NCBI RefSeq assembly: GCF_001194135.2
Contig: NC_068990.1
Span: 50,802,963-50,842,192, forward strand
DNA length: 39,230 bases
Source: Octopus bimaculoides
Taxonomy: Eukaryota
Direction of reading: 5' to 3'
The position numbers and the translations under genes are program-made. Positions within the stretch are counted from its first letter, which is position 1. Each line of letters opens with the position of its first letter. Below the pieces are notes generated by a model. It worked only from the letters and a program-made list of their open reading frames with translations, was not told where the DNA came from and did no database searches. Of the stretch, positions 1,991 through 38,339 are shown in pieces.

Positions 1991-2823
1991 AAATGAGAAA
2001 GTGAAAATGAACAGGGTCTTGTGCATCGGTTCACCTGTGCTCCAAACTTGTGGTGATGCCAGCAAATGCCATTTGAATTACGGGATGAACTTGGACTTCT
2101 AGAACGTCTTCCAGATCATCGTACGGGACTGTTGCTGTGGTGGTGCCTGTTGTATGATAAGGCTTGTATTTTCGTTGTCAGGAGCTGTATCTGTGATGCC
2201 TGCTCTGTCATTAAAGCTTGTAGTTCGGCCAGATCTGTTGCGCTGGTGGAAGGCGGGAAAGGATTGGTTGGTGGAGCTGCTGTTACAACTGCTGACAGGG
2301 ACGGACAACTGCGTGGGACATCGGCAATGCGGTCGGCTAATTCAGTGAGTTCCACCACTGACTTGCTGTCTTTGGTGGCAGTGAGGACCACTTGTGTATT
2401 AGATGGCAAATGTTGTCGAAAGAGCTGCTTCAACACTCTGTTGGGTAGATTATCATCTCCCATGAGTTGCTTCATTTGTCGCAAGAGCTGGGAGGGCTTC
2501 TTGTCCCCTAATTCTTCTGTGAGAAGTAGCTGGCAGAGACGCTTTTGTTGAGACTCTTCCATCCTGGTGAGCAGCGTAGTTTTGAAGGTATCAAATGATA
2601 CCGTGTCGGGAGGAGCCATGATAAGTTCGCGGACCTCATTCAGGATTTCGGGTGATAAGGACCCGATAATATGTGTGAGGCGAGTGGCATTGCTTGTAAT
2701 GCGGCTCGAAGCAAACTGGGCCACGATATAACAGAACCACAATGGAGGATCAAGAGTCGAAAAGAGTGGTACTTTGATGGAGATTGCAGCCTGGAAATTG
2801 TAGTTCTGTGTGCTGGAGTTCAT
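1966..2823 (-). pseudogene. gag: gag of CsRn1-like element, one in-frame premature stop
   Basis: ORF 2823-2116 (KVPLFSTLDPPLWFCYIVAQF...KPSQLLRQMKQL) continues in frame past a TGA at 2118-2116 (probably CGA>TGA in an R/S-rich tract). It then reads CWHHHKFGAQVNRCTRPC (C-X2-H-X9-C-X3-C, 2064-2011) and stops at TGA 1968-1966. Confidence 0.92.
1984..1990 (-). promoter_or_regulatory. -1 ribosomal frameshift slippery heptamer G GGA AAC at the gag/pol overlap
   Basis: gag frame reads TTG GGA AAC AAT...TGA; pol frame reads GGG AAA CAA TTC, i.e. -1. Canonical X XXY YYZ motif six codons before the gag stop. Confidence 0.8.
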
Positions 2824-2940
2824 GATATGGTGAGTTGGTGTGGTTCTTCGGATATGGTTGGATGGTTATTGCTGTAGGTACGGAGATCAGTATTCTAGTG
2901 GTGTCGAGTAAACTTTGATGAAGGCTGTGTTTCTTGCTTA

Positions 2941-2954
2941 AGTCAGGGTCACCA
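2941..2954 (-). promoter_or_regulatory. Primer-binding site complementary to the tRNA-Trp 3' end
   Basis: Minus strand reads TGGTGACCCTGACT; the complement of the tRNA-Trp 3' end is TGGTGACCCCGACGT (12 of first 13 match). tRNA-Trp priming is typical of CsRn1-clade elements. Confidence 0.85.
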
Positions 2955-2957
2955 TTT

Positions 2958-3462
2958 TGTAGTGGATATGTATCCTGTCATTGTGAATTCGTCTGTTGGG
3001 TTTGAATAAACTGCAGAGACTCGGTAATCAGAGTATAATTTCATTTATTTAGCATAAATGATACTGCGCTGATCGGACATCAGAACATATTACTACATTA
3101 CAAATGTGTATAACTAGCTACGAGTTATATGCAGAGAAAGCATGTATTTGGTTCAGCTTGGTTGATAGCAGTGAAAACCGCTGTTCTGGGTTGTTGCATA
3201 TCTTGGTTGAGTTGATAGCAGTTAAAACCACTTTTCATATGTTCGAGTCAGAAACTAGATTCAGACTGTCCATCTACTGTTCCGTGTTGTATTTATAGTT
3301 AGCAGCGAGGTAGACGATCTATTTTTAGCTATGGTGAAATTCTGCTGCTGATTTACAAAAAGGGCGCCAATTTAAGGTTTTCACTAAGGGAGCTATCAAT
3401 CTAATATTTGCTATTATGAAATCTTAACTAATTCAATCTAAGGCTATAAGATGTCCGTTACA
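2958..3462 (-). repeat. 5' LTR (~505 bp) of the CsRn1-like element
   Basis: Minus strand begins TGTAACGG (3462) and ends CCACTACA (2958): TG..CA ends with imperfect terminal inverted repeat. It lies 3 nt from the PBS. Minus-strand TATAAA at ~3292-3297 and AATAAA at 3044-3049. Outer flank is a TA microsatellite. Confidence 0.85.
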
Positions 3463-3566
3463 ATATATATAATATATATATATGNNNNNNNNNNCACATA
3501 TAGATACATAATATATATACATATAGATATATAATATACATATAGATACATAATATATATACACAT
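3463..3566. repeat. TA-rich micro/minisatellite (ACATATAGATAYATAATATATAT-like units) with small gap
   Basis: Direct reading; the same unit type recurs at 4274-4450. Confidence 0.9.
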
Positions 3567-4278
3567 AATTAAGGGATCAGCAACAGTTGCTTCACCACAT
3601 ACCGAAGTTCAGAAATAGCAGCTAAAATGCGGTGTTTACATACCGAAGGGCTTGGTAAAAATTATTAATTATTAATTTATTAATAAATTAATAAATGATA
3701 ATCCATTACCCTTTTAATTGTAATAATTATTCACTCCCGGAGAGTAAACAGCAGATTTTCTGCGGTATTGCCTGCGATGCACATGGTAATTCTTGAGGAG
3801 GGATGATGAGATGGCTGGCCTACGTAGGTTCGGAGATGTTTTCAAACTGTGCCGATTGTATGATGGCGCTCGGTCATACATGCACAATTGCTGGCATCGT
3901 CGAATTTGCAACTGCAATATCATACTGATGAGGTAATGAAGAGTTTTTCCTTCTAAGCCAGAAACATGTATATGATTAACTATGATTAGTTTAGTTCGTT
4001 ATTATTATTTTTTTTTCTTCTTGTTTTGCCTTTGTGAGTTACAGGTAATGCTATCTGTTGGAGTTTCAGCATTTTAGCTGCTATTTCTGAACTTCGGTAT
4101 GTGGTGAAGCAATTTTTGTTGATCCCTTAATTTTGTTTATAAATGTATAAGAACTTTTGAATAAGTTCCTCGCCGATAATGGTGTTTACATACCGAAGGG
4201 CTTGGTAAAAATTATTAATTATTAATTTATTAATAAATTAATAAATTGATAATCCTTTACCCTTTTAATTGCAATAAT
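3567..4278 (+). mobile_element. Non-coding repeat unit with 64-bp inverted repeat, ~97-bp direct repeat and hammerhead core; Penelope pseudo-LTR/retrozyme-like
   Basis: 3567-3630 is the reverse complement of 4069-4132 (61/64 identical). 3631-3727 repeats directly at 4181-4278 (3 differences). Hammerhead motif at 3919-3976. No convincing ORF. Confidence 0.6.
3919..3976 (+). ncRNA. Minimal type I hammerhead ribozyme candidate
   Basis: ATCATA (stem I) - CTGATGA (3925-3931) - stem II region - GAAA (3961-3964) - palindromic ACATGT (stem III) - cleavage triplet GTA (after 3970) - TATGAT (stem I partner, 6 bp). Caveat: base before GAAA is A rather than C. Confidence 0.6.
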
Positions 4279-4317
4279 ATATATACATATAGATAAATAA
4301 TATATATATACATATAG

Positions 4318-4364
<47 letters not shown>

Positions 4365-4450
4365 CATATACATATAGATATATAATATATATATATACAT
4401 ATAGATATATAATATATATATACATATGAATATATAATATATATATACAT
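4274..4450. repeat. TA-rich micro/minisatellite
   Basis: (TA)n plus ATACATATAGATATATAATAT units. Confidence 0.9.
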
Positions 4451-4617
4451 ATCATCGTTTAACGTCTGCTTTCGATGCTAGCATGGGTTGGACGATTTGA
4501 CTGAGGACTGGTGAAACCGGATGGCAACACCAGGATCCAATCTGATTTGGCAGAGTTTCTACAGCTGGATGCCCTTCCTAATGCCAACCACTCAGAGAGT
4601 GTAGTGGGTGCTTTTAT
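4448..4617 (-). mobile_element. Isolated 3' end of the RTE LINE family
   Basis: Near-identical to 4958-5125 (CATCGTTTAACGTC...GCCAACCACTC), the tail of the RTE copy at 4945-7653. Confidence 0.85.
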
Positions 4618-4692
4618 ATGTATTTATTTATTTATGGGTTTCAGCCAACTGGTTGTGGTCATGCTGGAGCACCACCGTGACTTTCCGCCTCA

Positions 4693-4909
4693 GGAACCTG
4701 CACAAAGTAGATGTAGGGGTTTTTAAATCAAAGCTGGACCTCTTCCTATCTGACGGCAGGAGATGCAAATGAGGGTTGCTAAATCAAACTCCATTTTTCA
4801 CCAAGTGCCACATATTGTAGGAGGCTCCCCGTAATAGCAGTGTAGCAACACGGCGGTGCATCAGCATGGCCGCAGCTCTAAGCTGAAACTGTAAACAAAC
4901 AAAAAAAAA
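4693..4909 (+). mobile_element. 3' end fragment of CR1-like LINE
   Basis: Matches the reverse complement of 7660-7887 (GGAACCTGCACAAAGTAGATGTAGGGG...GCTGAAACT) and ends in an A-rich tail. Confidence 0.85.
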
Positions 4910-4944
4910 TATATTCAATATATCAATACGTACATATATATATA

Positions 4945-7653
4945 TCATCATCATCATCATCATCGTTTAACGTCCGCTTTCCATGCTAGCATGGATTGGA
5001 TGATTTGACTGAGGACTGGTGAAACAGATGGCTACACCAGGCTCCAATCTGATTTGGCAGAGTTTCTACAGCTGGATGCCTTTCCTAACATCAACCACTC
5101 AGACAGTGTAGTGAGTGCTTTTACGTGCCACCGACACAAAGGCCAGTCATGGGGTACTGGCAATGGCCACGCTCGAATTGTTGCATTTTACGTGCCACCT
5201 GCACAACAGTCAGTCCAGCGGGGCTGGCAACGAACTCGCTCGAATGTCTTTCACGTGCCAGGAAGGCGATGTTGGTAACGGTCACGCTCAAATGGTGCTA
5301 TTTACGTGCCACCGGCACGAAAGCCAGACAGCTGATTCTTTGGCAACGATCACGCTCGGATAGTGCTCTTAGTGATTTACTGGTACAGGTGCCATCACGA
5401 TTTCCCTTTTGCTTGCCCCAACAGGTCTTCGCAAGCCGAGTTTAGTGTTCAATGAAGATGTTGGCATGGGTGCCAGTCTACAAATTTAGTTCGATTTCAA
5501 TTTCACTTGCTTCAACAGGTCTTTGCAAGCGGAGTTTAGTGTCCAAAGAAGAAATGTTACGCATAACTGGGCTCGCTACATCCCTGGGAGAGAGGCCTTG
5601 GATTTTAGTTTAATCCCTGGCAGAGGCCTTGGATTTTGGTCTCACTTGGCTTGCCGGGTCTTCTCATGCACAGCATATTTCCAAAGATCATGCTTCACCA
5701 CCTCATCCCAAGTCTTCCTGGGCCTGCCTCTTCCACGGGTTCCCTTAACTGCTAGGGTGTGGCACTTTTTCACACAACTATCCTCATCCATTCTCGNNNN
5801 NNNNNNNNNNNNNNNNNNNNNNNNNNNNNNNNNNNNNNNNNNNNNNNNNNNNNNNNNNNNNNNNNNNNNNNNNNNNNNNNNNNNNNNNNNNNNNNNTGAG
5901 GCCCAATGTTCGAAGGTCTTGCTTCACCACCTCATCCCAGGTCTTCCAGGGCCTACCTCTTCCCTCAACTACTAGTGTGTGACACATATTCACACAGCTA
6001 TCCTCGTCCATTCTCGCCACATGATCACACCAACGCAATCGTCTCTCTTGCACACCACAACTGATGCTTCTTAGGTTCAGCTTTTCTCTCAAGGTACTTA
6101 CACTCTGTCTAGTATGCACACTGACATTATACATCCATCGGAGCATACTGGCTTCATTCCTTGTGAGCCTACGCACGTCTTCAGCAGTCACGGCCCATGT
6201 TTAACTGCCATGAAGCATGGCTGTTCGTACACATACGTCATACAGTCTGCCTGTCAGAGCTCTCTGAACTCTGCCCAGGCTATTCTTATTCTAGCAGCTA
6301 CACTTTCAGCGCACCCTCCCCCACTACTAACTTGGTCACCTAGATAGTGGAAGGTATCAACCACTTCTAGTTTTTCTCCCTGGAATGTGGCAGTAGTTGT
6401 TTTCTGCACATTTACAGTGTTTATAGCTACTGAACATCTGCTACATACAAAAACTAACTTCCTAGTTAACCTTCCTTTGATATTGCTGCACTTTTTATGT
6501 GTCCATAGCTTGCACTCGGTGCATCTTATAGAGTTTCTACTTACGCCTTTTCTACAGATCGAGCAGGGCCATCTACCTGAAGGTGTTTATGATTTTTCTA
6601 CCTTCCTACTTATTAGGACTTTGGTTTTAGCTAGGTTGATTCTAAGGCCTTTCAATTCTAGTCCTTGCTTCCACATCTGAAACTTCTCCTCTAGTTCTGA
6701 TAGTGACTCAGCAATTAGTGCAAGGTCATCAGCATAGAGGAGCTCCCAGGGGCATCCTGTCTTGAATTCATCTGTTATAGCTTAGAGGACTATGATAAAT
6801 AGGAGGTGGCTGAGGACAGAACCTTGGTGGCCCCCTACCTCTACCCGGAATTCTTCACTGTACTCATTGCCAACCCTCACTTTACTGACAGCGTCTCTGT
6901 ACATGGCTCACACAGCTCTCACTAACCATTCTTATATCCCAAGTTTCGTCATTGACCACCAGACGATGAATCGGGGGACCCTGTCAAAGGCCTTCTCCAT
7001 GTCAATGAAAGCCAGGTACAGAGGTCTATCCATGGCTAGGTATTTCTCCTGAAGCTGTCTTACCAGAAATATAGCATCAGTGGTGCTTTTTTCCCTGGCA
7101 CGAACCCAAACTGCATCTCATCTAAACTGACCCGCTCCCTAATTAGTTGGGCTATGCCCCTCTCTGTGACTTTCATTACCTGATCTAACAGTTTGATGCC
7201 TCTGTAATTATTTGTATCTAAAGCGTCACCTTTACCTTTGTAGCAGTTGACAACGGAGCTGCTACACCAGTCATTGGGTATGACTCCTTCGTGTATCACC
7301 TGGTTAACAATACAGGTGACTAGGCTATAGCCGACACTGCCAGATATTTTGAGCATCTCTGCAGTGATTCCTGATGGGCCGGGGGGCCTTCCCTGTCTTC
7401 ATACTCTTAATTGCTTTATCTACCATGGTACTGTCAACACGGATAGCTGGTCCCTCAGTTGGGTCAACATTCGGCAGACTCTCTTTCTCCCATTCATTCT
7501 CTTTATTGAGCAAACTTTTGTAGTGGCGTCTCCAAACCTCTTTCTTTGCAGCCTCGTTTAGTGCAAGCATACCTTCATCCATGCGAACCCATTTCTCTCC
7601 CACGACATCACGATTCTCTCTCCCACACTGTCTTGCAACACGAAATACCTCAA
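4945..7653 (-). mobile_element. RTE-clade LINE, 5'-truncated, with RT, C-terminal domain, 3' UTR and (GAT)n tail
   Basis: Fragments NYRGIKLLDQVMKVTE...DEMQFGFVPG, MEKAFDRVP, HQGSVLS, LLYADDL, LRWCDHVARMDEDSCV...GRGRPWKTWDEVVKQDL. (TCA)n on + strand at 4945-4963. Gap at 5797-5896 with a second diverged C-terminal piece to its left. Confidence 0.92.
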
Positions 7654-9689
7654 GTTTTTTTGTTTTTTTTCCCTATAGTTTCAGCTGATGCACTGCTGTG
7701 TTGCTACAGTAATATTACGTGGAGCCTCCTACAATATGTGGCACTTGGTGAAGAATGGAGTTTGATTTAGCAACCCTCATTTGCACCTCTTGCCATGAGG
7801 TAGGTTCATCTGGGACTCTCGACAGGAACAGGTCCAGCTTTGATTTAAAAACCCCTACATCTACTTTGTGCAGGTTCCTCAGGCTCTTTGGGAGAATATT
7901 AAAAAGCTGTGGGCCCCTGAAACCCAAACTGTTGCAGTAACTGGTCCTGAAGCGCGATGGCATTGCTGGGATCTTTGGCACTATGCAGTGTTGTCCCATT
8001 TTGGCATTGGTGTAGCTTNNNNNNNNNNNNNNNNNNNNNNNNNNNNNNNNNNNNNNNNNNNNNNNNNNNNNNNNNNNNNNNNNNNNNNNNNNNNNNNNNN
8101 NNNNNNNNNNNNNNNNNNNNNNNNNNNNNNNNNNNNNNNNNNNNNNNNNNNNNNNNNNNNNNNNNNNCGGCTGAGGACGAATGTCCTCCAGAGGGCCATC
8201 ATGGTTTCCTTATCTCTGGTTCTGAATGTTCTCAGGATCCATCCAGCCAGTCGCCTGCACTTTGTCGCCATCCTGGTAATGTGCACTTGGAAAGAGGTAT
8301 CATCACTCATGTCGATAACGAGGTCTCTCACTGATTTCGGTTCTGGGATTGAAATTCCCTGCGGACCAGTGTACTCTGTAAGTTTCATATTCAGTTTTGG
8401 ACGTTGGTAGTGCAGGGCTTGGAATTTTTCAGCATTAAACTGCATATTATTATCCTCAGCCCATCTGTAAACTGAATCCAACTCCTGCTGCAGATGGCAA
8501 CATCACTGGAGTTCTGTATTTTCTGTGAGACTTTCGTATTGTCTGCGTAGCTTGCAAGAGTGGCTATCCGGGCACTTGAGGGCATATCTGAGAGAGCGAC
8601 TATAAAAAGCAATGGTCCCAAGACAGTGCCCTGTGGAACACCACTCATTATTTGTGTTTTCATAGAGGTGGCTCCATTAGCACTACTGCCTGACTTCTAT
8701 CTTTCAGAAAGTTATGTAACCACTCTCCAAGTTTTCTAGCTATGCCAAGATCACGCATTATGTGGCATATCACACCATGATCCACTTTGTCAAAAGCTTT
8801 TGCAAAATCAAGGTATATTAAGTCCACATTTGAGTTGTTGAGTAACTGCCTCAACACCCAGTCATAATGTTGTAAGAGCTGGGTCAGGCAGCTCCTACCT
8901 GGTCGAAAGCCATGTTGGGTATCACTCAGCAATTTATTTTCTTCGAGGAATACGATTAGTTTTCTTCTGACTATCCTTTCCATGACTTTGCTGATGTGTG
9001 AAGTCAGAGAGATAGACCTATAGTTTTTGGCATCTGCTCTGCTTCCCCCTTTATGGATTGGGTATATAATTTCCTCCTTCAGCTTGCTTGGCAGTCTGCC
9101 GTTTGCGAGAAAGCTCTGGAAGAGGATCTGGAGGGGTTTTGCCAGGGCATGCTTACACGATTTAAGGAGGATTGCTGGGAAACCATCAGGGCCAGCAGTT
9201 GAGTTTGTGTCCACTTCATGTATACCTAGTAGTACATCTTCTTCGCTAATGTTGATGTATTCCATCGTAACTGCCTCACTGGTTATAGGGGAGGTAGCAA
9301 AGAAGTCCACTGGTTCGTTCACTTGTCTGGGCTCCAACGGAGTGGTAAAGACACTTTTGAACTGCTCATTCAGTACCTCACTGATCCTAGTTGGACTGTC
9401 TGTGAGGGAGCCATCCTTTTCGAAGAGGGGTCCAATCTTGCAGCGTACTGAGGCTGTTTCTTTTGCGTAATGAAAGAAGGCCTTTGGATTTGACTTAATG
9501 TTTTCCATATGTATATTATTACATATCTCTCCCGCCTGCACTCCAGGGAGTAGAGACCTAGTGCCTTCAGTCGCTCCCTGTAGTTCATCTGCTGGAGTGT
9601 GGCGATCTTTTTTGTATAGTGACGCTGAATTGCCTCGAGTTCTGCTCTCCGCTTGACACTGTTTGGTGACCACAACTGAGAGCAATAGT
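7654..9689 (-). mobile_element. CR1/L2-group LINE, 5'-truncated, decayed RT ORF
   Basis: NYRSISLTSHISKVMERI, QHGFRPGRSCLTQLL, DLIYLDFAKAFDKVDHG, SGVPQGTVLGPLLF, YADNTK, NMQFNAEKFQAL, C-terminal RGPQLFNILP, A-rich tail at 7654-7672. Confidence 0.9.
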
Positions 9690-10022
9690 CTAGGCGGCTT
9701 GTAGCGTATATATGTGCTTGTTTACATATATCTATTATATATATATGTGTACGTCAGAGTATAAGGATATTAAAATCAGATATATTGCATGTTTATAACT
9801 AAATTGGTATTAAGTAAAACATCTAAAAAAAATATTTTTATAATATTAATTAAAGTTAATCAAAAGTTTTATTATTATTAATAAATTCATTAAGCAGAGA
9901 GGGAATAATTGTGTATTTTTTGGCTATATAGAATTAATGTGTCACATTATCAGATTATGTGTAATTGAAAGAACAACAAGATTATCACTATTGAAGATTG
10001 TATGTTTATATAGTAATTATAT

Positions 10023-11150
10023 TACAAGCCATGTATAGGGATGCTGTCAGTAAGGTAAGGTGAGGGTTGGCAAGGAGAATAGCGAAGAATTCTAGGTAGA
10101 TGTCGAGGCTCACCAAGTACCAGTCCTCAGATCCCTCTTGTTCATCATAGTCCTCTGGGCAATAACAGAAGAATTTAAGACAGGCTGCCTCTGGGAGCTC
10201 TTTTATGCTGATGACCTTGGTCTAATAGTTAAGTCACTACCAGACTGAGAGAAGACATTTCAGGCGTGGAAGCAAGGTCTAGAATTGAAGGGCCTTAGAG
10301 TTAACCTAACAAAAACCAAAGTCTTAATAAGTAGGGAGGACAAATCACAAATCCCTTCAGGTAGATGGCCCTACTTGATCTGCAGAAACGGCATAGATAG
10401 AAACTCCATAAGATGTATCTGGTGTAAGCTATGGACACATAAAAGGTGCAGCAATATCAAAGGAAGGTTGACTGGGAAGTTAGCTTTTGTGTGTGGGAGA
10501 TGCACAGGTGCAATAAACACTGAAAATGTAGAGAAAACAGATTCCATCACATGTCAGGAGGAAAAACTAGAAGTAGTTGATAGTTTCTGTTACATAGGTT
10601 ACCAAATGAGTAGTGGTGGGGATGCTCTAAAATAAGAATAGGTTGGGCAAAGTTCAGAGAGCTCCAACCTCTGCTGGTAACAAAGAGCCTCTTGCTCAGA
10701 GTGAAAGGTAGGCTGTATGATGCATGTGTGTGAACAGCCATGCTACACAGCAGTGAAACATTGGCTGTGGCTGCTGAGGATATGCATAGGCTTGAAAGAA
10801 ATGAAGCTAGTATGCTCTGCTGGGTGTGTAACATCAGTGTGCATGCACGACAGAATGTAAGTTTGCTGAGAGAAAAGTTTGACATAAGAAGCATCAGATG
10901 TGGTGTGCAAGAGAGATGACTGTGCTGACATGGTCATGCATTGTGTATAGATGAGGACAGCAGTGTGAAGAAGTGTCACACCCTAATGGTGGAGGGAACC
11001 TGTGGAAGAGGTAGACCCAGGAAAACATGGGGTGAGGTGGTAAAGCATGGCTTTTGAATATTGGGTCTCAGGTAATGACAAGTGACCGAGACCTTTGGAG
11101 ATATGCTGTACTTGAGAATACCCTGCAAGTCAAGTGAGATCATAGTCATA
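10023..11150 (+). mobile_element. RTE LINE 3' half (RT motifs through 3' end)
   Basis: ELFYADDL, KGLRVNLTKTKVL, KLEVVDSFCYIG, RLYDACV, MLCWVCNISV, GRGRPRKTW; same family as 4945-7653, opposite strand. Confidence 0.9.
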
Positions 11151-11184
11151 GCCAATTATTACTACAATTCCATTTATATATAGC

Positions 11185-12940
11185 TAGCAATATTTAGAGA
11201 AAAGATACTTAGAAGCATGTACACTAGCTAAAACTTTTTCTTTTCTAGAATTTAGTAGTTGATTTCTGGAAGAAGATATTTGGTATATCTTTTCTAGACA
11301 AAGCTCACACCTCCTATCATTGGTACTATATGTTTTAGCATGACTCATAATTTTCATCAAATGAACTTACTAAGACTTGTATTATTAATTTTTAGATGGT
11401 TCCTGAAACTATTCTCGTGGATAGCTATTTTCTTTATAAAGCATTCTGTTGATCCAAAAGTAATTCTTACCTTCAGATTCAACAATAGCCTGATATACCT
11501 GATTAATGCATTTACAAAAATTGCTAAATTTACAGTTGGACTTATCCTTACAATTACAAAATTTATTTTCATCAAATCTTTTAATTTTGTGCAATAACAA
11601 AGGAGTTCTGGTGGGTTATTTCCCCTTCACTATTTGAACTAAAGTTATCGTCATTACTTATGGCCAATTTATTATGTTGTCTATTCAATGAAGAAATGTC
11701 TATTTTACGATTCTCATAAAACTAATCAAGTTTGCAGTTGTTAATTGAAGAAATAATTCCAAATAGATTATGAAATAAAGAGAATCCTATTCTAGTTTTC
11801 CTTTTATCATTTCACTATATTTATTATTAGTAAAGTATTTAATTATTAATCTTTGCAAAATTTTAATTAAGTTAGATTTTATTTGTTTTCCAAAAGGGGA
11901 TAAGAAGCCATATAGTATCATCCTTATCAGAATTAGGATTATAATAATTGCCATTATTTATTCTAGTGGAGTTAACACAAGGTATATATGGCTTAGTCTT
12001 GTTCATGTGAGTACTATAAATTCCATTTCCATTTATTGGATTTCAAATTATACTGATCAATAGTATTATTATTCTGAGATTTCTTATTTCCATCATTATA
12101 CCCTATAAAACTTTAGTTGGACTCAATGCTTAACATTCCTGGATTGTTATCTTTATTATTATCAATATTCATATTACTAAATCTTTATTGTTGTTAAAAA
12201 TTTCCTCATTTGATGAGAGGTAATTAATTCTTTTTCAATATTTGAAGTTAAACAATTAGTTATTGATTTTGGATGATTACTTTTAAAGTTACTTAATTTA
12301 GAATTAGGTTTATGGTAAGGCTTATATTTCCCTGTTTTAAGATTGAAATTTATATCTAAGAAGTTTAACTGAGTGTATTGAAATAGATAGTCCAAATCAT
12401 TTAAAAAATGATAGAATTTTTTCTTATATATTTCTAGTTTCCTATGAGATGGGCTTTTGATAACAAAAAGTGCATCATCCCTATACAAACCACCTGCTAT
12501 TTCTGGAAATTAATTATTTAAATTAAATAAGATATATATTCCTACAAGATCTGTCACCTGTGCAGAATTGGCAGACCCCCATTGCAATGTCAAAACAGTC
12601 ATATGTGTCATTTCTAACCCAATATCTATTATCAAAATTAATAACCGATTTTCTAGCTACTAATATTACATTTATTTCATTCATACTCATGTTTGTAGTT
12701 TTTTTTTTTTTTTTGGTGAATAAGAATGCTTTATCAAGAACTATTGGGCTAATGGAGGAATAATAGTCATTAATATCAACCTGCAAGAATTTATATCTGT
12801 CCTTGTTTTTAATATGATTGAACCAACCTATTGCCTTCTGTGTATTAGACCAAAGTTCCAATTGAATCTTCTTTTTCAGGACAATAATATATTTGTCAAT
12901 AATAGACTTTATTTAATTTCCCTATGTCTGATTAGGGATA
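11185..12940 (-). mobile_element. Penelope-like element remnant: RT plus GIY-YIG endonuclease
   Basis: WSNTQKAIGWFNHIKNKDRYKFLQVDINDYYSSIS, GLYRDDALF, FLDINFNLKTGKYKPYHKPNS, then QVYQAIVESEGKNY.GSTE...HENSFR (GIY-YIG) and RRCELCLEK...LLNSRKE; many frameshifts. Confidence 0.88.
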
Positions 12941-13770
12941 AAAACTATATTTTTATACTTATGCACACACAAGATATATATATATATATATATANNNNNN
13001 NNNNNNNNNNNNNNNNNNNNNNNNNNNNNNNNNNNNNNNNNNNNNNNNNNNNNNNNNNNNNNNNNNNNNNNNNNNNNNNNNNNNNNNNNNNNNNNNNNNN
13101 NNNNNNNNNNNNNNNNNNNNNNNNNNNNNNNNNNNNNNNNNNNNNNNNNNNNNNNNNNTTTTTAACAGCTATTCTATTCAAATTAAACTACACATACACA
13201 AGCAAAAATAAGTCAATCTGATTCGATAAGATTTTATAATAATATATAGATAGTAATATACATTGATTATATAAATCAATATAAACTTACATAGATAACA
13301 GTTTCATTTTTATTTTTTTACCCTTATATTAAATTTTAATCTTTTTTAATATCATTTTTTTATATTATTAGCATATACATACACAAAATAAATATACTTT
13401 TCTTAGCCTATTGATAAAATCCAATCCATAGACAGGTAATTCTTTCTACTGAAGCCCTAATGAGATTCTACCCAATATTATTCAAAATGCTATTTTATTC
13501 CTATCATTTGATTTATTCCAATCTTTAATTTGCAATTGTATATTGGATTGAATTGAAATGTGCATAGGCTTTATTTGATTTTATTTTTTGGCAGTATGTT
13601 AATAAATTAATTTTATATCCTTACAAAGTTGGTTTGACATACATTAGTTTGACATACAAGAAATGGGAAAAGAAGGAAATATCTTTAACATCCATTCTTC
13701 TTTTGAAAGATAGGACAGAGATGAAGAGAAGGAAAATTAGAGAAATAGAAATGCTCGCTTGTGTATCCAA

Positions 13771-15830
13771 CTTATTTCCAACCCATACTTTACTGACAGC
13801 ATCCTTGTATATGGCTTGTATAGCTCTCACTAGCCACTCTACTAGTCTTAGTTTCTGCAGTAACAACCAAATAAGGGGATCCTATCAAAAGATTTCATCA
13901 TGTCAACAAAAGCTAAGTACAGAGGTTTACTTTTGGGCAGGTACATCTCCTGCAGTTGTCTTACCAGGAATATAGCATCAATGGTGCTTCTCCTTGGCAC
14001 AAAACCAAACTGCGTCTCATCTAGACTAACACTCTTCCTAATTAGTTAAGCAATAACCTTCTCCGTAACTTTTATCACCTAATCCACCAATTTGATACCT
14101 CTGTAATTATTTCTAAGGTGTCACCTTTGCCTTTGAAGTAGTTGAGTATGGTGCTGCTACATCAGTCATTGGGTATGAGTCCCTCATGTACAACCTGATT
14201 GACTATATGTGCGATGAGACTATAACCCACACTGCCAGATATTTTAAGCTTCTCAGTGGTGATTCCTGATGGGCCAGGGGCTTTCTCAGTCTTCATATCC
14301 TTCATGACTTTATCTACCAAGCTACTGTCTATTTGGATAGTTGGTCCCTCTGTTGGATCTACCTTAGCCAGACTCTCCTCCCATGAGTTCTCTACATTTA
14401 GCAGCTTTTCATAGTAACACTTTGAAGCCTCCTTCTTAGCAGAGTCACTAATTGCAAGTGAACCATCATTCATGCAAACGCACTTCTCTCTAACCACATC
14501 ACAATTTTCCGTGACACAGTTTTGTAAGCTGGAACACTTCAAGCTGCTGGTCCTCATGTCACAGAACATTGGCAAACCTCTTCCTTTCTGCTTCACCCTT
14601 GGCTAGGTATACCTGCCTCCTAGTTTCCCTTCTAGCTACATGATATAGTTTCTTGCTACTGCAGCCCTTCCAGGCCTGCTTCTTTCCTTCAATGGCCCTG
14701 TCAACTACACTGTTTCACCACAATGTCACAAATTTGGTCTGTGGCTCTCAGTACGTTGTCTCATAGGAACTTCCAGTTATTCTCTATGTGACATGTCTTT
14801 AACTCCTCCTTCTCATTAAATGCATCAGTTATGACTTCTGTAAGTCACTGACTATTCAGAGTATCCTTAAGCTTCCAGGCCCTTCTTTTCCAGACTGGCT
14901 TCTTTCTTAGAATCCTTCTTACTTGTAGTCTGAAAACACTAATGACTAATCTATGCTGAAGGGTAATTCTTTGCCAGGGAAGGTCTTTGCATTTATGAGC
15001 AACCATGAATCTCACTTCTTGGTGAGAATATGGTCACTGGATTTATAGTTATCAGGTGATTTGTTGGTTTCCTGAAGTTGGTGTTGCAGATCATTAGGCC
15101 ATTCATATCACAGAACTCTAGCAACCTTGTTCCCTCTTCATTTTGGGAATCAATTCCATGGCTCCCATGTACTCCATGGAAGACACCTGGGTGCTGCCCA
15201 ACATGTCTGTTGAAATCACCAGCCACAAAGATAAGGTCACCATAATTTGTCCTTGAGGCAGCCTACAGAAGAATGTTATAAAAGCAGTCCTTTTGTTCAT
15301 TCGGCAGACAAGGTTTGGTGGTGGTGGTAGTAGGGGGGAAGCAGAGGCAGAGATGATTGTTGCTATGCTACTCTGTAAATCTAGTTGAAGCTTAATTACC
15401 CTATCATACACTCTGTCTACTCCAATCATCTTATTGACCCATTTCTCTGCTAGAAGTATGCCCATACCTCCTACTCCGTCACTGTTGCTCTCCCAGAAGT
15501 GTTTTTTTTTATACCTATGTCTCTTGTCTGTGAGGAATCTGGTTGAAGCTCACCTCCTCCTTACTTCTTGAAAGCAGCACATGTCAGCATGTCTCTGTTC
15601 AAGCATCTCAACAATATCACCAGGCCTATCTTTCAATATGCCTACATTGATAGTGCCAACTGTGAGGGAGTGTATAGGAGGTAGGAGGTAACACAAGGCA
15701 GGGAAACTGGCTTTTGACATCTGAAAGGGAAGTTCTAAAGAGCATTGTGAACAGACATGACATAACAATTGTCCTTGCATTTAATCTCCCATCATTCATA
15801 TTACTTGCTGCTCCCACTGGAAGTGGGTTC
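13771..15830 (-). mobile_element. RTE LINE 5' half: apurinic endonuclease and first part of RT, broken mid-RT
   Basis: VGTINVGILKDRPGDIVEMLEQRHADMCCFQEVR, GDFNRHVG, LLEFCDMNGLMICNTNF, KAPGPSGIT, NYRGIKL, ending at AIQAIYKDAVSKVWVGN. Confidence 0.9.
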
Positions 15831-16561
15831 TAAATAAGTATTAGAACAAGTGATGTTAGTACAAATACAGTTAATCAAATAAATGAATAAGAGTAGAGTA
15901 GTTATTCATTATATATAGTTAGATGGTTAATTAACTAAGCAATAAAACTGGATACTGCATGATCACAGTTAGTTTTGCTTTCTTTGGGGTGAAGTAGTAA
16001 GCTACAGCATTTGTAATTGCAGCAATGTGGGTGACACTACTGGGAAGAGGGACGGATGAAGGGTTGCCATGAGAAGTTCTGGTACAGAAGGGAGATTTAC
16101 GGTATAGGTGGAAAAGGGTGGGCACATTGTGGATAAGTAAACATTGAAGCAAAATTCTTAGTATTAACGAAGAGAATGACAGGAGAAAGGAGAGATGGAG
16201 CAAGCATAAGTTAAATTAAATTAAATCAAATTAACTAAATTAATCAAGTTAAGTTAAATTAATACAGGTGGGGGCTAGTGAGGTAGAATGTGGATTAATG
16301 CTGGGGTGCAAAGACCAACTTATCTTATCTGTTCCTATCTTGGCATGCGTGTCGGATAGTTAGCCAAAAGAGAAATCGAAGGTTTGGGATCTTATTTATA
16401 CTAAATGGTTGGCAGGAGGCAATATGGCTGCCAGAAGTATGCAATGAAAATACAAATAGAGGATATAGAAAGCTCTAATGAAATATAGAGATGTTTATAA
16501 CAAGTAAGATATGTAATAAGCTAAGAACAAACACCAAGAAATTTGTGTAGTATTTACATAC

Positions 16562-16637
16562 CTAAAGAATGTTTATATGTTCCTGAGACCATGGAATTAT
16601 GAGCATTGAGTAAAGCAAGGGCAATGTTGTCTGGATG
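16562..16637 (-). CDS. GTF3C3: GTF3C3 coding exon (76 nt, phase 0 to 1): HPDNIALALLNAHNSMVSGTYKHSLG
   Basis: Acceptor ttctttcatctttgtcttaatAG, donor GTatgt; matches recalled human NPENHALCVLNGHNAFVSGSFKHALG. Confidence 0.92.
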
Positions 16638-18827: not shown

Positions 18828-18926
18828 TTTCATCATTAGACGTAAACAGAACCTGTTGTGACGTCCATCAGAAGAACATATAATGACTTGATTGAAAAGA
18901 TTCCAGGCTTGGTTATTATTGATTTC
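18828..18926 (-). CDS. GTF3C3: GTF3C3 coding exon (99 nt, phase 0 to 0): EINNNQAWNLFNQVIICSSDGRHNRFCLRLMMK
   Basis: Acceptor cttttctcttgtctttttcAG, donor GTaagc; only frame 0 is open; matches recalled human ENVNKPQLWNIFNQVTMHSQDVRHHRFCLRLMLK. Confidence 0.95.
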
Positions 18927-19163: not shown

Positions 19164-20107
19164 TAGTGGTTCTCAATCTTTTCTTTGCTCCACTCTCCTA
19201 AGAAATGGCTTGATTAATTTTCACTCTCCCTACAAAAGTAATATAATATTTGAAGATGGAAAAGTCAATTTTCTAGCAACTAACTTATATTTTTAATTGA
19301 ATCACATACAGCAACCAAACTGAACTAAAAAAAAAATACACTTTTGAGTAATTAGGAAAAAACTCTTTAAACAATGAAATTAATCACAGCTGTGAAAATA
19401 AAACTCAATGACTTCTTTTGTTCTTGCTTCTCATTCATGACTTTATCAAGACAGAATCTTTTACTAATAGTGATCCACAGGTAATTCCTCAATTTTTTTT
19501 TGATTGGCAAAAGAGAATTCACACAAATATGTTGTTCCAAATGAAATGAGTACACAGAATTCTTTTCCAGTGCTGAACACTAAAACTTTTCCAAAGACTA
19601 GCTTTTAAATTATAACCAAAGAGCTTGACTTGTCTGTAAATCAGTAAGATTTTACTTAATCCATCTGATATTTTCTCCAAGTTGCAGGAATATAGATTCA
19701 TAAACTTTTTTTTTTAATCTTTAGGGTTCCAGTAGCAAAATATCCATCAAACAATTTTGACAGCATTTCCACATATGCTACAATTTCTTCAAGCTCAGTA
19801 AAAGTTATGTATCCAGCATCATCAATCATCACTTCAAATGAAGGGAAATTTGAAGGATTGCTTTTTTCTATCTGACACCAAAGGAGTAATTTTTTCTTTG
19901 GAATCATTTAGCTTTTCACAAGCCTTTAACATATCCTTTCTTATCAAGAGAAGCCCTTAGGTCAATCACTGAAACTGTCTGCTCAATAAGCTAGCATATG
20001 AGTGAATTTTTGTGATTATAATGCTTCAGCTAGATCACATTCACACTCCTGTAGAAAAACTTTTAATGTCTTGCTGCATGTTTCAAAGAAGTAAATTAAA
20101 ATTTCTC
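19164..20107 (-). mobile_element. hAT (Buster/ZBED-like) transposase C-terminal remnant with probable 3' TIR
   Basis: Decayed frames FFETCSKTLKVFLQECECDLAEAL..MLAY.ADSF, KKLLLWCQIEKSNPSNFPSF, LSKLFDGYF, VLISFGTTYLCEFSF, IKKKLRNYL...KQEQK (dimerisation domain). TAGTGGTTCTCAA at 19164 resembles a Buster TIR. Confidence 0.8.
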
Positions 20108-20303
20108 CTGTGAAAAAAAAAAAAAAAAAAAGGACTTTGGCACTTCCTACATCTTCACAAAATGATTAGAAAGATAAGGTGAATCAAAGCAATCCTCTTA
20201 TTTGGTTGAAATAGCTCATAATTAGTAGTGTGCATTATTTATGAGTGCATTTAGAAAAATAAAATAAACTAAGTAAAAAAAAAAGAATAGTGCAAAAACT
20301 AAC

Positions 20304-20390
20304 CTTGACACAAATTTCTCGAATAAGATTATATGCCAACTTGCCATTTCTACTGAGAGTACAAGCTATAAGGCATAAAAATTCAGCTTC
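20304..20390 (-). CDS. GTF3C3: GTF3C3 coding exon (87 nt, phase 0 to 0): EAEFLCLIACTLSRNGKLAYNLIREICVK
   Basis: Acceptor cctgttttctctgtAG, donor GTtagt; aligns to recalled human ELEYFGLSAAILDKNFRKAYNYIRIMVM. Confidence 0.92.
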
Positions 20391-20507
20391 CTACAGAGAA
20401 AACAGGTAACAGTATGTTATATTTTTTTATGAATAAAAACAAAGTTTTCCTCAGAAGTACATTTATAAAAAATCTTATAAAAATCATTTAGAAAAATCTG
20501 TTGTTAC

Positions 20508-20553
20508 CATTGCTCCTGACAGTACAATGTATCAGGTATAACAGCTCAGTTTT
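20508..20553 (-). pseudogene. Diverged tandem duplicate of the 5' part of the 20390-20304 exon (KTELLYLIHCTVRSNG); pseudo-exon or poison exon
   Basis: 37/51 nt ungapped identity (20553-20503) to the first 51 nt of the real exon, starting exactly at its own acceptor ttgtattttattcccAG. Candidate donor G|GTAACA after 46 nt; read-through stop TAA at 20490-20488. Confidence 0.7.
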
Positions 20554-21248
20554 CTGGGAATAAAATACAATATCCATATACACTTCTGAATTTTGAAATA
20601 TGTATGAAGATAAAATTAGTATTACTGAGGTAAAGGTAATGTAAAAACTGGTAACTTTTGAATGGGTAAATGATTCTGAAAATGTAATGAAATCTTAATT
20701 AGATATGATAAGCATGTTATGTTCATATTATGGCTCAAATTCAGATGGAGTTGACTTTATTTATCATTCTTTTAGTTCTGACAAATACTAGTCAAATGCT
20801 GGAGATTAATTAAATCATCTATAATCCCTATGTCCACCCAAATAATATGTGTAGTCTTGTGTTGATTTCATTATTCTTATTGAAAGCATAATCGAAGATC
20901 AATTTCAAATGTATGCAAATGAATTAAATTAAAATATACACAATTGATTATAATTACATGGATTTTATAATTTGGGGTTTTACAACTTGGTCAGATATCG
21001 TAACATATGAGTAGTTAGTGGTTTCTTTTGAATTTACAGGTTTCTGTTCAGGAAATTAATTTTTCTTTGTCTATGCTTCAGTAGTTTTCCCATACTTTAG
21101 TGGAATACACTATTAGATAATGAAGCTGCATTAGTTTTAATAAGAAATTTCCTGTATCACATGATTTTCAAACAGAAGGCACTTGGTGCACAGAGGAGGA
21201 ATTTCAGTCAAAGAAAGGTTTCTGAACTGAGAAAGAATGTGTTGTGTG

Positions 21249-34049: not shown

Positions 34050-35830
34050 TGGGCAGTTCTAGAAATACATGTTGCCAGTCATCCTGTTTCTTTTTCATCA
34101 ATCTTCATGAGGTTCAAGGTTCTGAGATAGCCTTCACCACTTTGTCTCATGTCTTCTTAAGTCTCTATCATCCACAAGCTCCATCCACATTTAGTGATCA
34201 GCACATCTTTATACAGCTGTTCTCATCCATATGCATCACATGTCCATACCAGTGCAGCCTTCTTTCTTCAACATTATATCTAATTCTTCTTATGTCTAGT
34301 TTTTCTCTCAATGCATTTGTATTCTGTCATTCATGCATGCTTACATTGCACATCCAATGGGGAATCTAGTTGTATTTCTTTCCAGCCTTCTCAAGTCCTC
34401 TGCATTCACTATGTCTCACTACCATGCCCCATTGCATTTCTAACACAAGTGTCATACAATTTGTTCTTCTCTCTGAGGGAAAAAAAACTTTGTTGCCAGC
34501 AGCTGCAGTAGCTCCTATGAATTTTCTTCAACCTGTGCTTAACTACTGTATATTCACAGCAACCACCTACCCTGCTAATTACAACTAGCTACTGACTACT
34601 GCTAGTGAGCCATCCAGGCATTTAAAAGAATCTATTTCTGGTGTGTTCCATTGCATTTGTCACATATGATGCTTACTTTCTCTGGTAGTCTACTTGTCAT
34701 TCCACTACACCTCTTGTGTGTTCATAGCTTACAACTGGTACAATGTTTGGAGTTTACATTTACTCTGCTGTTGCAAATCAAGCACGTCATTTTCCGGATG
34801 ATACCAAAGTCCTGTCTTCTTTCTAGTATGCATATACCTTAGTGTTTGCAAAGTTTATCTTAAGGCCTCCCAATTCTAGATTTAGCTTCCATGCTTGGAA
34901 TTTTTCCTTTAGTTCCACTATAGATTCAGCTATAAGAACTAAATTATCAGCATAGAGGAGTTCCTATGGACAGCCAGTATTAAATTCCTCTGTGATGGCC
35001 TGCTGGGTTATGATGAATACGAGGAACAATGAACATTAATGAACTCCTACATTCATACTAAATCTGTTATTGAAATTGTTGTTGATTCCCATTTTACTTA
35101 CTGTATCTTTGTACATATCTTGTACAACCATCACAACCCATTTGTCTACACCTAGTTTCCAATTACAGAGCATCGTATTTTGTCAAATGCCTTTTCCAAA
35201 TCAACAAAGGCCAGGTACAGTGATTTACTCTTAGTTTAATATTTCTCCTACAGTTACCTCACTAAGAAGATTGAATCCATGGTACCTCTTCTGGGCTCAG
35301 AGCTGAATTGTATCTTATCTAGGTATACTTAGTCACAGATTAATTGTTATATGATTTTCTCTATGATCTTCATAAGCAGTTTGATTACCAAAGCATCTTT
35401 CTAAAGCATCTCCTTTACTTGTGTAGTATTTTATGATGACACTGATATACTAATTATTGGATATGATACCTTCCTGTATAACTTGATTAACTATCCAGCT
35501 GGTAATCAGAAATCTTACCTCACTAGATGTTTTGAGCACCTCTGCAACTATTCCTGGTGGACCCAGAGCTTTCTCTCTCTTCATGTTCCTTATTGATTCA
35601 TTTACTATGCTGCTGTCAACTTGAATTGCTGGTCCCTTTGTAGGATCAGCATGAGATAGCCCCTCTATATCCCATGCATTCTCCACATTCAGCAACCTGT
35701 CATAACAGCACTTCTATATCACTTTCTTGTCTTCCATATCTATGGTGTGTATGCCTTCATCATTCTGAATACACTTCTTACTAATGAGGTCTCACTTCTC
35801 TCTCACACACTGTCTTGCAATCCTGAACAC
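34050..35830 (-). mobile_element. RTE LINE fragments (main family), old
   Basis: Homologous to 5900-7650: DPTKGPAIQVDSSIV, KALGPPGIVAE, DLEKAFD, GCP.ELLYADNL, C-terminal region to ~34050. Confidence 0.85.
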
Positions 35831-35929: not shown

Positions 35930-36034
35930 TTTATATTTCTCTTCATCTCCCAATATTTGGGGATTTGTTAAACCATGAATACAAGCATCCAAAAGGTCAT
36001 TGTACATCTTCTTTTCCCAAAGACCACGACACAA
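35930..36034 (-). CDS. GTF3C3: GTF3C3 coding exon (105 nt, phase 0 to 0): LCRGLWEKKMYNDLLDACIHGLTNPQILGDEEKYK
   Basis: Acceptor attttttctttttatAG, donor GTaatg; open frame; its end GDEEKYK joins EAEFL, paralleling recalled human DDRQKRK-ELEYF. Confidence 0.88.
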
Positions 36035-38250: not shown

Positions 38251-38294
38251 CATCAAAAATATATCCCAAAGATCATCAGCAGAAACAAGTGTTT
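38251..38294 (-). CDS. GTF3C3: GTF3C3 coding exon (44 nt, first 2 nt complete the previous codon, ends phase 0): TLVSADDLWDIFLM
   Basis: Acceptor ttttagaatatttttcAG, donor GTatgt; only one frame is open; matches recalled human SVLTKDDWWNLLLK and joins the next exon in frame. Confidence 0.85.
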
Positions 38295-38339
38295 CTGAAA
38301 AATATTCTAAAAAGAAAAGGAATAAATTAAGTTATTTAG

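What the first reader, a model, noticed from the sequence alone, without database searches (positions are those of the whole stretch)
20488..20555. Tandem-duplicated half-exon in GTF3C3 with intact splice sites: candidate poison exon
Upstream of the 87-nt exon, separated by a 117-nt intron, lies a paralogous copy. AAAACTGAGCTGTTATACCTGATACATTGTACTGTCAGGAGCAATGGTAAC versus GAAGCTGAATTTTTATGCCTTATAGCTTGTACTCTCAGTAGAAATGGCAAG gives 37/51 ungapped identity (KTELLYLIHCTVRSNG vs EAEFLCLIACTLSRNG). It begins exactly at its own polypyrimidine-CAG acceptor. A GGC/GGT difference creates a G|GTAACA donor after 46 nt, and similarity ends just beyond it. Every use is terminating: joined to the 87-nt exon it reads GGA AGC TGA, joined to the 99-nt exon GGA AAT CAA TAA, and read-through stops at 20490-20488. 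It is therefore either a decayed duplicate or an NMD-coupled switch controlling a Pol III transcription factor. I know of no description of this.
Basis: partly seen in the sequence, partly recalled or inferred. Interest (0 to 1): 0.75.

Follow-up and report, generated by a model that had tools for sequence, protein, structure and literature searches.

The report
Decayed partial copy of GTF3C3 exon
A 51-base leftover copy of the start of one exon of the octopus GTF3C3 gene sits in the intron just upstream; it looks spliceable but mutates at the same rate as ordinary intron DNA, so it is most likely an inert relic and not a regulatory "poison exon".

Summary
On the minus strand, window 20553-20503 matches the first 51 nt of the 87-nt exon (20390-20340) at 37/51. 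The next best of about 78,000 positions scores 27. The host gene is GTF3C3, and the 87-nt exon is exon 20 of 25. The copy follows ...ttattcccAG and is followed after 46 nt by G|GTAACA. Every way of splicing it in gives a premature stop.

The poison-exon reading is not supported. The copy is present in four Octopus-lineage genomes but absent from Argonauta and a cuttlefish. Against a fourth, more distant octopod it diverges like intron: 10.9% plus a 1-nt indel, versus 11.2% for flanking intron and 3.4% for exon 20. Its differences from exon 20 look neutral (pN/pS 0.69; a ratio of 0.1 or less is rejected). Both splice sites fall in the weak tail of the gene's real sites. Two equally good decoy site pairs occur elsewhere in the gene's introns. 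No predicted protein in the public collections carries its peptide.

Best reading: a neutrally decaying relic of a partial local exon duplication, which is a well-described kind of feature. Transcript evidence could not be tested. Interest is low.

The parts
20503..20555 (-). Homology block: the acceptor AG plus 51 nt copied from the 5' end of GTF3C3 exon 20 (37/51 identical to 20390-20340).
   Evidence: also present in O. sinensis L002:36872-36922, O. vulgaris and a fourth octopod L021:311-361
20508..20553 (-). The 46-nt 'pseudo-exon' as delimited by the AG and the GT. It is 47 nt in the fourth octopod. Its length is not a multiple of 3.
20554..20573 (-). Acceptor-like site atattgtattttattcccAG. 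It scores 8.2 bits on the gene's own matrix; 22 of 24 real acceptors score higher.
20502..20507 (-). Donor-like site G|GTAACA, created by GGC>GGT relative to exon 20. It scores 6.2 bits; 20 of 24 real donors score higher. The real donor of exon 5 has the same hexamer. O. vulgaris has GTGACA (3.4 bits).
20488..20490 (-). TAA that ends the read-through frame in this species. It is absent in O. sinensis and O. vulgaris, where the frame runs on to the TAG of the exon-20 acceptor.
20391..20507 (-). 117-nt spacer between the copy and exon 20. It holds the polypyrimidine tract and acceptor of exon 20. It has no detectable homology to the rest of exon 20 or to intron 20.
20304..20390 (-). GTF3C3 exon 20 (87 nt, phase 0-0; EAEFLCLIACTLSRNGKLAYNLIREICVK). 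This is the parent of the copy.
35930..36034 (-). GTF3C3 exon 19 (105 nt), with donor AAA|GTAATG.
18828..18926 (-). GTF3C3 exon 21 (99 nt).
38251..38306 (-). GTF3C3 exon 18 (56 nt), given for context.
16562..16637 (-). GTF3C3 exon 22 (76 nt), given for context.
22052..30707 (.). About 8.7 kb of species-specific sequence in intron 19. It is absent from O. sinensis. It holds retrotransposon ORFs (RVT_1, rve, DUF7083) on the plus strand and two N gaps.
31594..35299 (.). A second species-specific insertion in intron 19 (about 3.7 kb). Its identity was not determined: the one ORF tested here (35450-35713, minus strand, just outside the insertion) had no Pfam hit.

Best explanation
The block is a non-functional relic of a short local duplication. 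The duplication copied the 3' splice-site AG and the first ~51 nt of GTF3C3 exon 20 into intron 19, about 112 nt upstream of the parent exon.

The event happened in the lineage leading to Octopus after it split from the Argonauta lineage. It is roughly ten times older than the split between this species and O. vulgaris/O. sinensis. Since then the copy has drifted like any intron sequence.

Its acceptor-like AG came with the copy and happens to lie after T-rich intron. Its donor-like GT arose from a single C>T change. Both sites are weak.

The spliceosome may occasionally use them. The product would then carry a premature stop five exon junctions before the last one, and would presumably be removed by NMD as splicing noise.

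**Shown:** homology, phylogenetic distribution, neutral rate, neutral substitution pattern, weak site scores, premature stops in silico.

**Inferred:** the mode of origin (a larger tandem duplication followed by deletions, or a templated insertion during repair), and the absence of regulated use.
For: - **Homology is real and local.** It is 37/51 versus 27 for the next best position. It is the only convincing exon-to-intron paralogy in the 46-kb gene (E=1.2e-5). It is single-copy in the genome.
- **Lineage-restricted.** It is present in the window, O. sinensis, O. vulgaris and a fourth octopod. There is no second copy anywhere in the Argonauta hians or Acanthosepion pharaonis gene loci. The copy shares the Octopus-derived T at site 33 of exon 20.
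- **Age.** The copy differs from its parent by 0.34 substitutions per site (JC-corrected). Intron divergence between the window species and O. sinensis is 0.054. Fourfold-site divergence between Octopus and Argonauta is 0.91.
- **Neutral rate.** Against the fourth octopod, the copy shows 5/46 differences plus a 1-nt indel (10.9%), pooled intron 37/329 (11.2%) and exon 20 3/87 (3.4%); Fisher p=1.0. Within the three close species it shows 1/46 variable sites, and 26% of 46-nt intron windows are as conserved.
- **Neutral pattern.** There are 10 nonsynonymous and 4 synonymous differences, giving pN/pS 0.69. Neutrality is not rejected (p=0.36); a ratio of 0.1 or less is rejected (p<=6e-4). Real exon 20 between species has pN/pS 0.05-0.10. 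Derived changes in each lineage move away from the parent sequence.
- **Weak sites.** The acceptor scores 8.2-8.7 bits and the donor 6.2-6.3 bits (3.4 in O. vulgaris), in the low tail of the real sites. Two other AG...GT pairs at least as good occur in 40 kb of this gene's introns.
- **No isoform found.** No protein in the 5.8-billion-cluster collection carries KTELLYLIHCTVRSNG. A transcript-derived fragment shows the normal KYK|EAEF junction.
Against: - Both splice-site dinucleotides are intact in all four species. The donor hexamer GTAACA is identical to the functioning donor of exon 5. The gene also uses donors scoring as low as 3.7 bits. The block is therefore splice-competent on paper.
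- The similarity starts within a few bases of the exon boundary and does not extend into either flank. A simple tandem duplication followed by uniform decay does not predict this, so the origin is not fully explained.
- No RNA-seq could be consulted. NMD substrates are under-represented in assembled transcripts, so the lack of an isoform is weak evidence.
- The comparison set spans only about 11-14% intron divergence. Weak constraint on a 46-nt element cannot be excluded.
Confidence: 0.8

Rival explanations
1. Regulated poison exon. The 46-nt block is a cassette exon whose inclusion shifts the frame, creates a premature stop in exon 20 and sends GTF3C3 mRNA to NMD. This would tune the dosage of a Pol III transcription factor in Octopus.
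For: - An AG acceptor after a pyrimidine-rich stretch and a GT donor are present in all four species.
- The donor hexamer equals the real donor of exon 5.
- All inclusion products terminate early and far upstream of the last junction. This holds for both the 46-nt and the 47-nt versions.
Against: - There is no excess conservation of the block or its flanks over the surrounding intron. Characterised poison exons are typically far more conserved than their introns (established knowledge; not tested here).
- It is absent from Argonauta and the cuttlefish.
- The sites are weak, and comparable decoys exist elsewhere in the gene.
- O. vulgaris carries a donor change that lowers the score to 3.4 bits.
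- No isoform carries the peptide.
- No literature links GTF3C3 to poison exons.
Confidence: 0.06
2. Remnant of a once-functional alternative exon. Exon 20 was fully duplicated in tandem and the upstream copy served for a time as a mutually exclusive coding exon. It then lost its 3' part and decayed. This would explain why similarity is confined to exonic sequence.
For: - Similarity begins at the exon boundary and neither intron flank is alignable.
- The copy is in phase with exon 19.
- Second codon positions carry the fewest differences (5/2/7 by codon position).
Against: - pN/pS of 0.69 over the whole history leaves little room for a long period of coding constraint.
- The codon-position skew is small, on only 14 differences; it was not tested formally.
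- No second copy exists in Argonauta or the cuttlefish.
- The 36 nt that should follow are at random identity, 9/36.
- Exon-derived sequence is also less prone to slippage indels than the AT-rich, homopolymer-rich flanks. That alone could explain why it alone remains alignable. This point is inference; indels are visible in the spacer.
Confidence: 0.1
3. Chance resemblance in AT-rich intron sequence, with no common origin.
For: The intron is 72% A+T and low in complexity, which inflates background similarity.
Against: - The match is 37/51, against a maximum of 27 over about 78,000 other positions.
- BLAST gives E=1.2e-5 within the gene locus.
- The copy is on the same strand and adjacent to its parent, and is conserved in four species.
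Confidence: 0.01

Closest known systems
Unannotated intronic relics of tandem exon duplication (Letunic, Copley & Bork 2002, as summarised in Ivanov & Pervouchine 2022, PMC9013439)
   Same: An intronic stretch, on the same strand and next to an annotated exon, that is significantly similar to that exon and keeps an acceptor AG. According to PMC9013439, about 10% of animal genes have tandemly duplicated exons, and more than 2,000 such unannotated candidates were found by the same kind of similarity search.
   Different: Only the first 51 of 87 nt are recognisable. The AG-to-GT length is 46-47 nt, so it breaks the frame and cannot act as a substitute coding exon. No expression evidence is available.
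Poison exons / NMD-coupled cassette exons (e.g. in SR-protein and other splicing-factor genes)
   Same: Inclusion would introduce a premature stop many junctions upstream of the last exon, which is the configuration that triggers EJC-dependent NMD.
   Different: Known regulatory poison exons are strongly conserved, often ultraconserved, and mostly sit in genes whose products can regulate their own splicing (knowledge, not tested here). This block evolves at the intron rate, is genus- or family-restricted, and lies in a Pol III transcription factor gene.
SCN8A exon 18N/18A (PMC3809569)
   Same: This is a pair of duplicated neighbouring exons in which one copy carries an in-frame stop, so its use yields a non-functional message. 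It shows that a duplication-derived terminating exon is a described concept.
   Different: 18N is a full-length, mutually exclusive, tissue-regulated exon with demonstrated expression and RBFOX control. The octopus block is a truncated copy with no demonstrated expression.
Cryptic pseudoexons in long introns (e.g. the DMD pseudoexon catalogue, PMC7175933)
   Same: Intronic AG...GT pairs that look like exons, are normally ignored or used at noise level, and usually break the frame.
   Different: Most pseudoexons arise from unrelated intron or transposon sequence. This one derives from the neighbouring exon.

Membership tests
GTF3C3 / TFIIIC102 (host gene) | Sequence homology to GTF3C3 across the exons in the window | tested here: met
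   Human GTF3C3 chain 8clk_D matches at E=1.2e-15 over residues 659-728. The exons are 100% identical to the O. vulgaris/O. sinensis GTF3C3 protein. The 25-exon structure is shared with Argonauta, and its first 24 exons with the cuttlefish model.
Tandem exon duplication relic | Statistically significant similarity to a neighbouring exon of the same gene | tested here: met
   37/51 versus 27 for the next best position; E=1.2e-5 in the gene locus.
Tandem exon duplication relic | Same strand, located in the adjacent intron, not a dispersed repeat | tested here: met
   163-165 nt upstream on the same strand; only a self-match in the 2.34-Gb genome.
Tandem exon duplication relic | Homology of the whole duplicated unit, including intron flanks | tested here: not met
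   No significant flank alignment upstream (p=0.61) or downstream (p=0.07-0.97). The event was therefore either a short copy or was followed by deletions.
Mutually exclusive exon pair | Two copies of equal or near-equal length and the same phase, each with its own acceptor and donor, both open | tested here: not met
   The copy is 46-47 nt against 87 nt. It shifts the frame, and the next 36 nt are at random identity.
Poison exon (regulated, NMD-coupled) | Inclusion creates a premature stop more than ~50 nt upstream of the last exon junction | tested here: met
   The stop falls at codon 3 of exon 20, which is exon 20 of 25. The same holds for the 47-nt version.
Poison exon (regulated, NMD-coupled) | Exon and flanks more conserved than the surrounding intron | tested here: not met
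   10.9% plus an indel versus 11.2% for intron, Fisher p=1.0. 26% of intron windows are as conserved among the three close species.
Poison exon (regulated, NMD-coupled) | Splice sites of functional strength | tested here: inconclusive
   The sites lie in the weak tail but within the range of real sites of this gene: acceptor 8.2-8.7 bits, donor 6.2-6.3 bits. Two equally good decoy pairs occur elsewhere in the introns.
Poison exon (regulated, NMD-coupled) | Inclusion seen in transcripts and stabilised when NMD is blocked | not testable with these tools
   There was no access to RNA-seq reads. Searches of predicted proteins found no product with the block's peptide, which is weak negative evidence.

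The most novel reading that the evidence does not exclude
The block is a young, Octopus-lineage-specific poison exon. It would be used at a low or condition-dependent level to down-tune GTF3C3 through NMD, and maintained only through its two splice sites and its non-3n length. That could leave no detectable signal in a 46-nt, four-species comparison.
Probability: 0.05. Interest if true: 0.5.

Novelty: new member of a known kind. Interest (0 to 1): 0.12.

Why it matters
If the poison-exon reading were true, it would be a rare example of post-transcriptional dosage control of a core Pol III factor, born from exon duplication in cephalopods.

As it stands, the value is modest. It is a clean, datable example of how a partial exon copy with splice-site look-alikes can persist in an intron without being under selection. 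It is also a caution that "intact splice sites plus a premature stop" does not by itself indicate a regulatory exon.

The comparison also documents that the GTF3C3 gene is badly scattered in this genome's assembly. That matters to anyone mapping reads or annotating this locus.

Tried and rejected
- **Flank homology.** Gapped local alignments of the 147 nt upstream of the copy against the spacer, and of the spacer against the rest of exon 20 plus intron 20, were run under four scoring schemes with shuffles. Nothing was significant. The only matches were a 12-mer and the 13-mer ATTTTTCTAAATG.
- **Which copy is ancestral.** I asked whether the copy keeps the ancestral acceptor flank, because it appeared to share TTGTATT...CCCAG with the Argonauta exon-20 flank. 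This was rejected. The score ranks 12th of 24 Argonauta acceptor flanks, and 21% of decoy AG flanks do as well.
- **Alternative in-frame donors inside the block.** GT after 11, 28 and 33 nt all score negative on the gene's donor matrix.
- **Isoform search.** Two searches used chimeric queries carrying the inclusion peptide, covering candidate lengths 398-1265 aa and 53-168 aa. They returned only normal GTF3C3 clusters, one fragment with the normal junction, and a cuttlefish-type intron read-through ORF.
- **More species.** Only one further octopod could be reached, through an ORF that happens to span the block. Its 90% cluster has no other members. The species behind SRR11869385/SRR11869391 could not be identified from the paper library.
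- **Non-coding RNA.** There is no Rfam family and no tRNA in the window.
- **Other exon relics.** No other exon of the gene has a convincing intronic copy in Octopus, Argonauta or the cuttlefish.

Full report
**1. What is in the sequence**

The minus strand of window 20100-20800 reads ...gtattttattcccAG|AAAACTGAGCTGTTATACCTGATACATTGTACTGTCAGGAGCAATG|GTAACAacagatttttcTAA.... After 117 nt comes ...ttttctctgtAG|GAAGCTGAATTTTTATGCC...GTCAAG|GTTAGT.

- The repeat finder reports the pair as a 52-nt direct repeat, 75% identical, spaced 163 nt apart.
- Ungapped identity of the first 51 nt is 37/51.
- The same 51-mer scanned over both strands of the window scores at most 27 elsewhere (mean 13.0, sd 4.1).
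- After position 51 identity drops to 9/36.

**2. The host gene**

The three neighbouring open exons are 36034-35930, 20390-20304 and 18926-18828. Joined, they match human GTF3C3 (PDB 8clk chain D, residues 659-728) at E=1.2e-15. They are 100% identical to the GTF3C3 protein annotated in O. vulgaris and O. sinensis.

An exact spliced mapping of those proteins onto their genomic loci gives 25 exons. The 105-, 87- and 99-nt exons are exons 19, 20 and 21. The same first 24 exon boundaries are used in Argonauta hians and Acanthosepion pharaonis.

The window also holds exon 18 (38306-38251) and exon 22 (16637-16562). The window's genome is 2.34 Gb in 145,327 contigs. It differs by 5.4-5.7% in intron sequence from O. 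sinensis and O. vulgaris. It is therefore a third Octopus species, probably O. bimaculoides. That name is my inference from the assembly size, not a tool result.

**3. Consequences of using the block**

| Splicing pattern | Product |
|---|---|
| Exon 19 + block + exon 20 | ...RSNGS* |
| Exon 19 + block + exon 21 | ...NGNQ** |
| Read-through, this species | stops at TAA 20490-20488 |
| Read-through, O. sinensis / O. vulgaris | runs to the TAG of the exon-20 acceptor |
| Inclusion of the 47-nt version, fourth octopod | ...QEQWKLNFYAS* |

The stop lies in exon 20 of 25. The messages would therefore be NMD substrates under the exon-junction rule (established knowledge). Other GT dinucleotides inside the block score negative as donors, so no in-frame version is plausible.

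**4. How good are the splice sites?**

I built position matrices from 71 real donors and 71 real acceptors of this gene in Octopus, Argonauta and the cuttlefish.

| Site | Block score (bits) | Real sites scoring higher |
|---|---|---|
| Acceptor | 8.2-8.7 | 22 of 24 |
| Donor | 6.2-6.3 (3.4 for the O. vulgaris variant GTGACA) | 20 of 24 |

The sites are in range: exon 5 uses TTG|GTAACA, and the exon 19 donor scores only 3.7.

In 40 kb of intron of the same gene there are 24 acceptor-like and 53 donor-like sites at least as good. Two other AG...GT pairs 30-250 nt apart also qualify.

The AG is part of the copied block. The GT is a single C>T change at a former third codon position. "Intact splice sites" is thus only mildly unusual, roughly a 6% chance of a donor this good within 50 nt.

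**5. Who has it**

- The block is present at the same place in O. sinensis (1 mismatch in 51) and O. vulgaris.
- A HMMER search with the window ORF that runs through the block found a single 65-aa ORF on two Logan contigs.
- That 2.2-kb genomic contig comes from a fourth, more divergent octopod. It carries the end of intron 19, the block, exon 20, intron 20 and exon 21.
- Argonauta hians has a 418-nt intron 19 made of microsatellite, with no copy. The Acanthosepion intron 19 (1,092 nt) has none either. Whole-locus scans find no second copy of exon 20 in either species.
- At site 33 the block shares a T with Octopus exon 20, where Argonauta and the cuttlefish have C.

**6. Age**

| Comparison | Divergence |
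|---|---|
| Block vs parent exon | 14/51 (JC 0.34) |
| Intron, window species vs O. sinensis | 0.054 |
| Intron, O. sinensis vs O. vulgaris | 0.025 |
| Fourfold sites, Octopus vs Argonauta | 0.91 |

Most change must be on the unconstrained copy. The duplication is therefore about ten times older than the split among these Octopus species, and younger than or near the Octopus-Argonauta split. This agrees with the distribution.

**7. Is it under selection?**

It is not detectably under selection.

| Region | Differences, window species vs fourth octopod |
|---|---|
| Block | 5/46 (10.9%) plus a 1-nt insertion |
| Pooled flanking intron | 37/329 (11.2%) |
| Exon 20 | 3/87 (3.4%) |

- Fisher p for block versus intron is 1.0.
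- Among the three close species the block has 1 variable site in 46, and 26% of 46-nt intron windows do as well.
- Between block and parent there are 10 nonsynonymous and 4 synonymous differences. That gives pN/pS 0.69, which is compatible with neutrality (p=0.36) and incompatible with a ratio of 0.1 or less (p<=6e-4).
- Real exon 20 between species has pN/pS 0.05-0.10.
- Where the species differ, the derived state moves away from the parent sequence.

**8. Transcripts**

No RNA-seq could be queried. Two searches of the 5.8-billion-cluster protein collection used queries containing the inclusion peptide. They returned only the normal GTF3C3 clusters, a fragment with the normal KYK|EAEF junction, and an unrelated intron read-through ORF. 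This is weak negative evidence, because NMD targets are rarely assembled.

**9. Origin**

The similarity is confined to the AG plus 51 nt. Neither flank aligns. An apparent resemblance of the block's acceptor flank to the Argonauta exon-20 flank is not significant.

A plain 163-nt tandem duplication with uniform decay does not fit this. Two options remain:
- a larger tandem duplication followed by deletions and heavy indel turnover in the AT-rich flanks (indels are already visible there between close species);
- a short templated insertion during repair.

I cannot decide between them. A period as a coding alternative exon is unlikely given the pN/pS value.

**10. Comparison with what is known**

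Intronic copies of neighbouring exons are a catalogued class. About 10% of animal genes have tandemly duplicated exons, and more than 2,000 unannotated candidates are on record (PMC9013439, citing Letunic et al. 2002). A duplicated exon with an in-frame stop that switches a gene off is known in SCN8A, exon 18N (PMC3809569). No paper in the library links GTF3C3 to a poison exon.

The block meets the definition of an exon-duplication relic. It does not meet the conservation criterion of regulated poison exons, and it cannot be a mutually exclusive exon.

**11. Verdict**

It is a new instance of a known kind and of low interest. The decisive test is junction reads with and without NMD block.

Noticed in passing
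G000:C10:50503680-50841272 plus unplaced contigs C48166 and C51933 (window = C10:50802963-50842192): In this genome's assembly the GTF3C3 exons are spread over about 340 kb, on both strands and out of order. Residues 584-627 and 791-888 lie on two unplaced scaffolds. The same gene is contiguous in 44-45 kb in O. sinensis and O. vulgaris. This looks like scaffolding errors or unfilled gaps around this locus.
   Followed up: partly
window 22052-30707 and 31594-35299: Intron 19 is 15.5 kb here, against 2.9-3.0 kb in O. sinensis and O. vulgaris. The excess is two blocks absent from O. sinensis. The larger one carries degenerate retrotransposon ORFs (RVT_1, integrase core, DUF7083) antisense to the gene, plus N gaps at 22812-23101 and 24449-24817.
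   Followed up: partly
window 1-16100: Downstream of exon 22 the window stops being colinear with the O. sinensis gene at about 16109. It consists of reverse-transcriptase-bearing repeats (RVT_1 plus RNase H at 408-1256, RVT_1 at 8660-9721, DUF7041 at 2116-2865) and several N gaps. Exon 23 is not in the window.
   Followed up: partly
window 20497-20485 and 20260-20248; 20395-20387 and 20151-20143: Two short exact repeats lie near the duplication. ATTTTTCTAAATG occurs just after the block and again in intron 20. The exon-20 acceptor junction TGTAG|GAAG recurs 244 nt downstream in intron 20; it is also there in O. sinensis and O. vulgaris, and altered in the fourth octopod. These may be traces of a larger original duplication unit or chance; neither is statistically significant.
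   Followed up: partly
L002:36872-37036 and L003:36439-36603: In O. sinensis and O. vulgaris (and the fourth octopod) the two copies are 165 nt apart rather than 163. This puts the block in the same frame as exon 20. In O. sinensis and O. vulgaris the read-through frame stays open until the TAG of the exon-20 acceptor.
   Followed up: yes
L004:11573-11990: Argonauta hians GTF3C3 is compact (14.5 kb against 44 kb). Its intron 19 is a 418-nt array of CATCAT/CTTTGCCTT-type microsatellite.
   Followed up: no
L005:60671-66554: The annotated Acanthosepion pharaonis protein (P0004) ends in four tiny exons of 15-19 nt. Its C-terminus disagrees with transcript-derived decapod proteins (...REIAHNLSLIYQNSGS...). 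This is probably a gene-model error at the 3' end.
   Followed up: no
L021:1-235: In the fourth octopod the sequence more than about 80 nt upstream of the block is not alignable to the three Octopus species. This points to an indel or insertion there. The species behind SRR11869385/SRR11869391 could not be identified.
   Followed up: no
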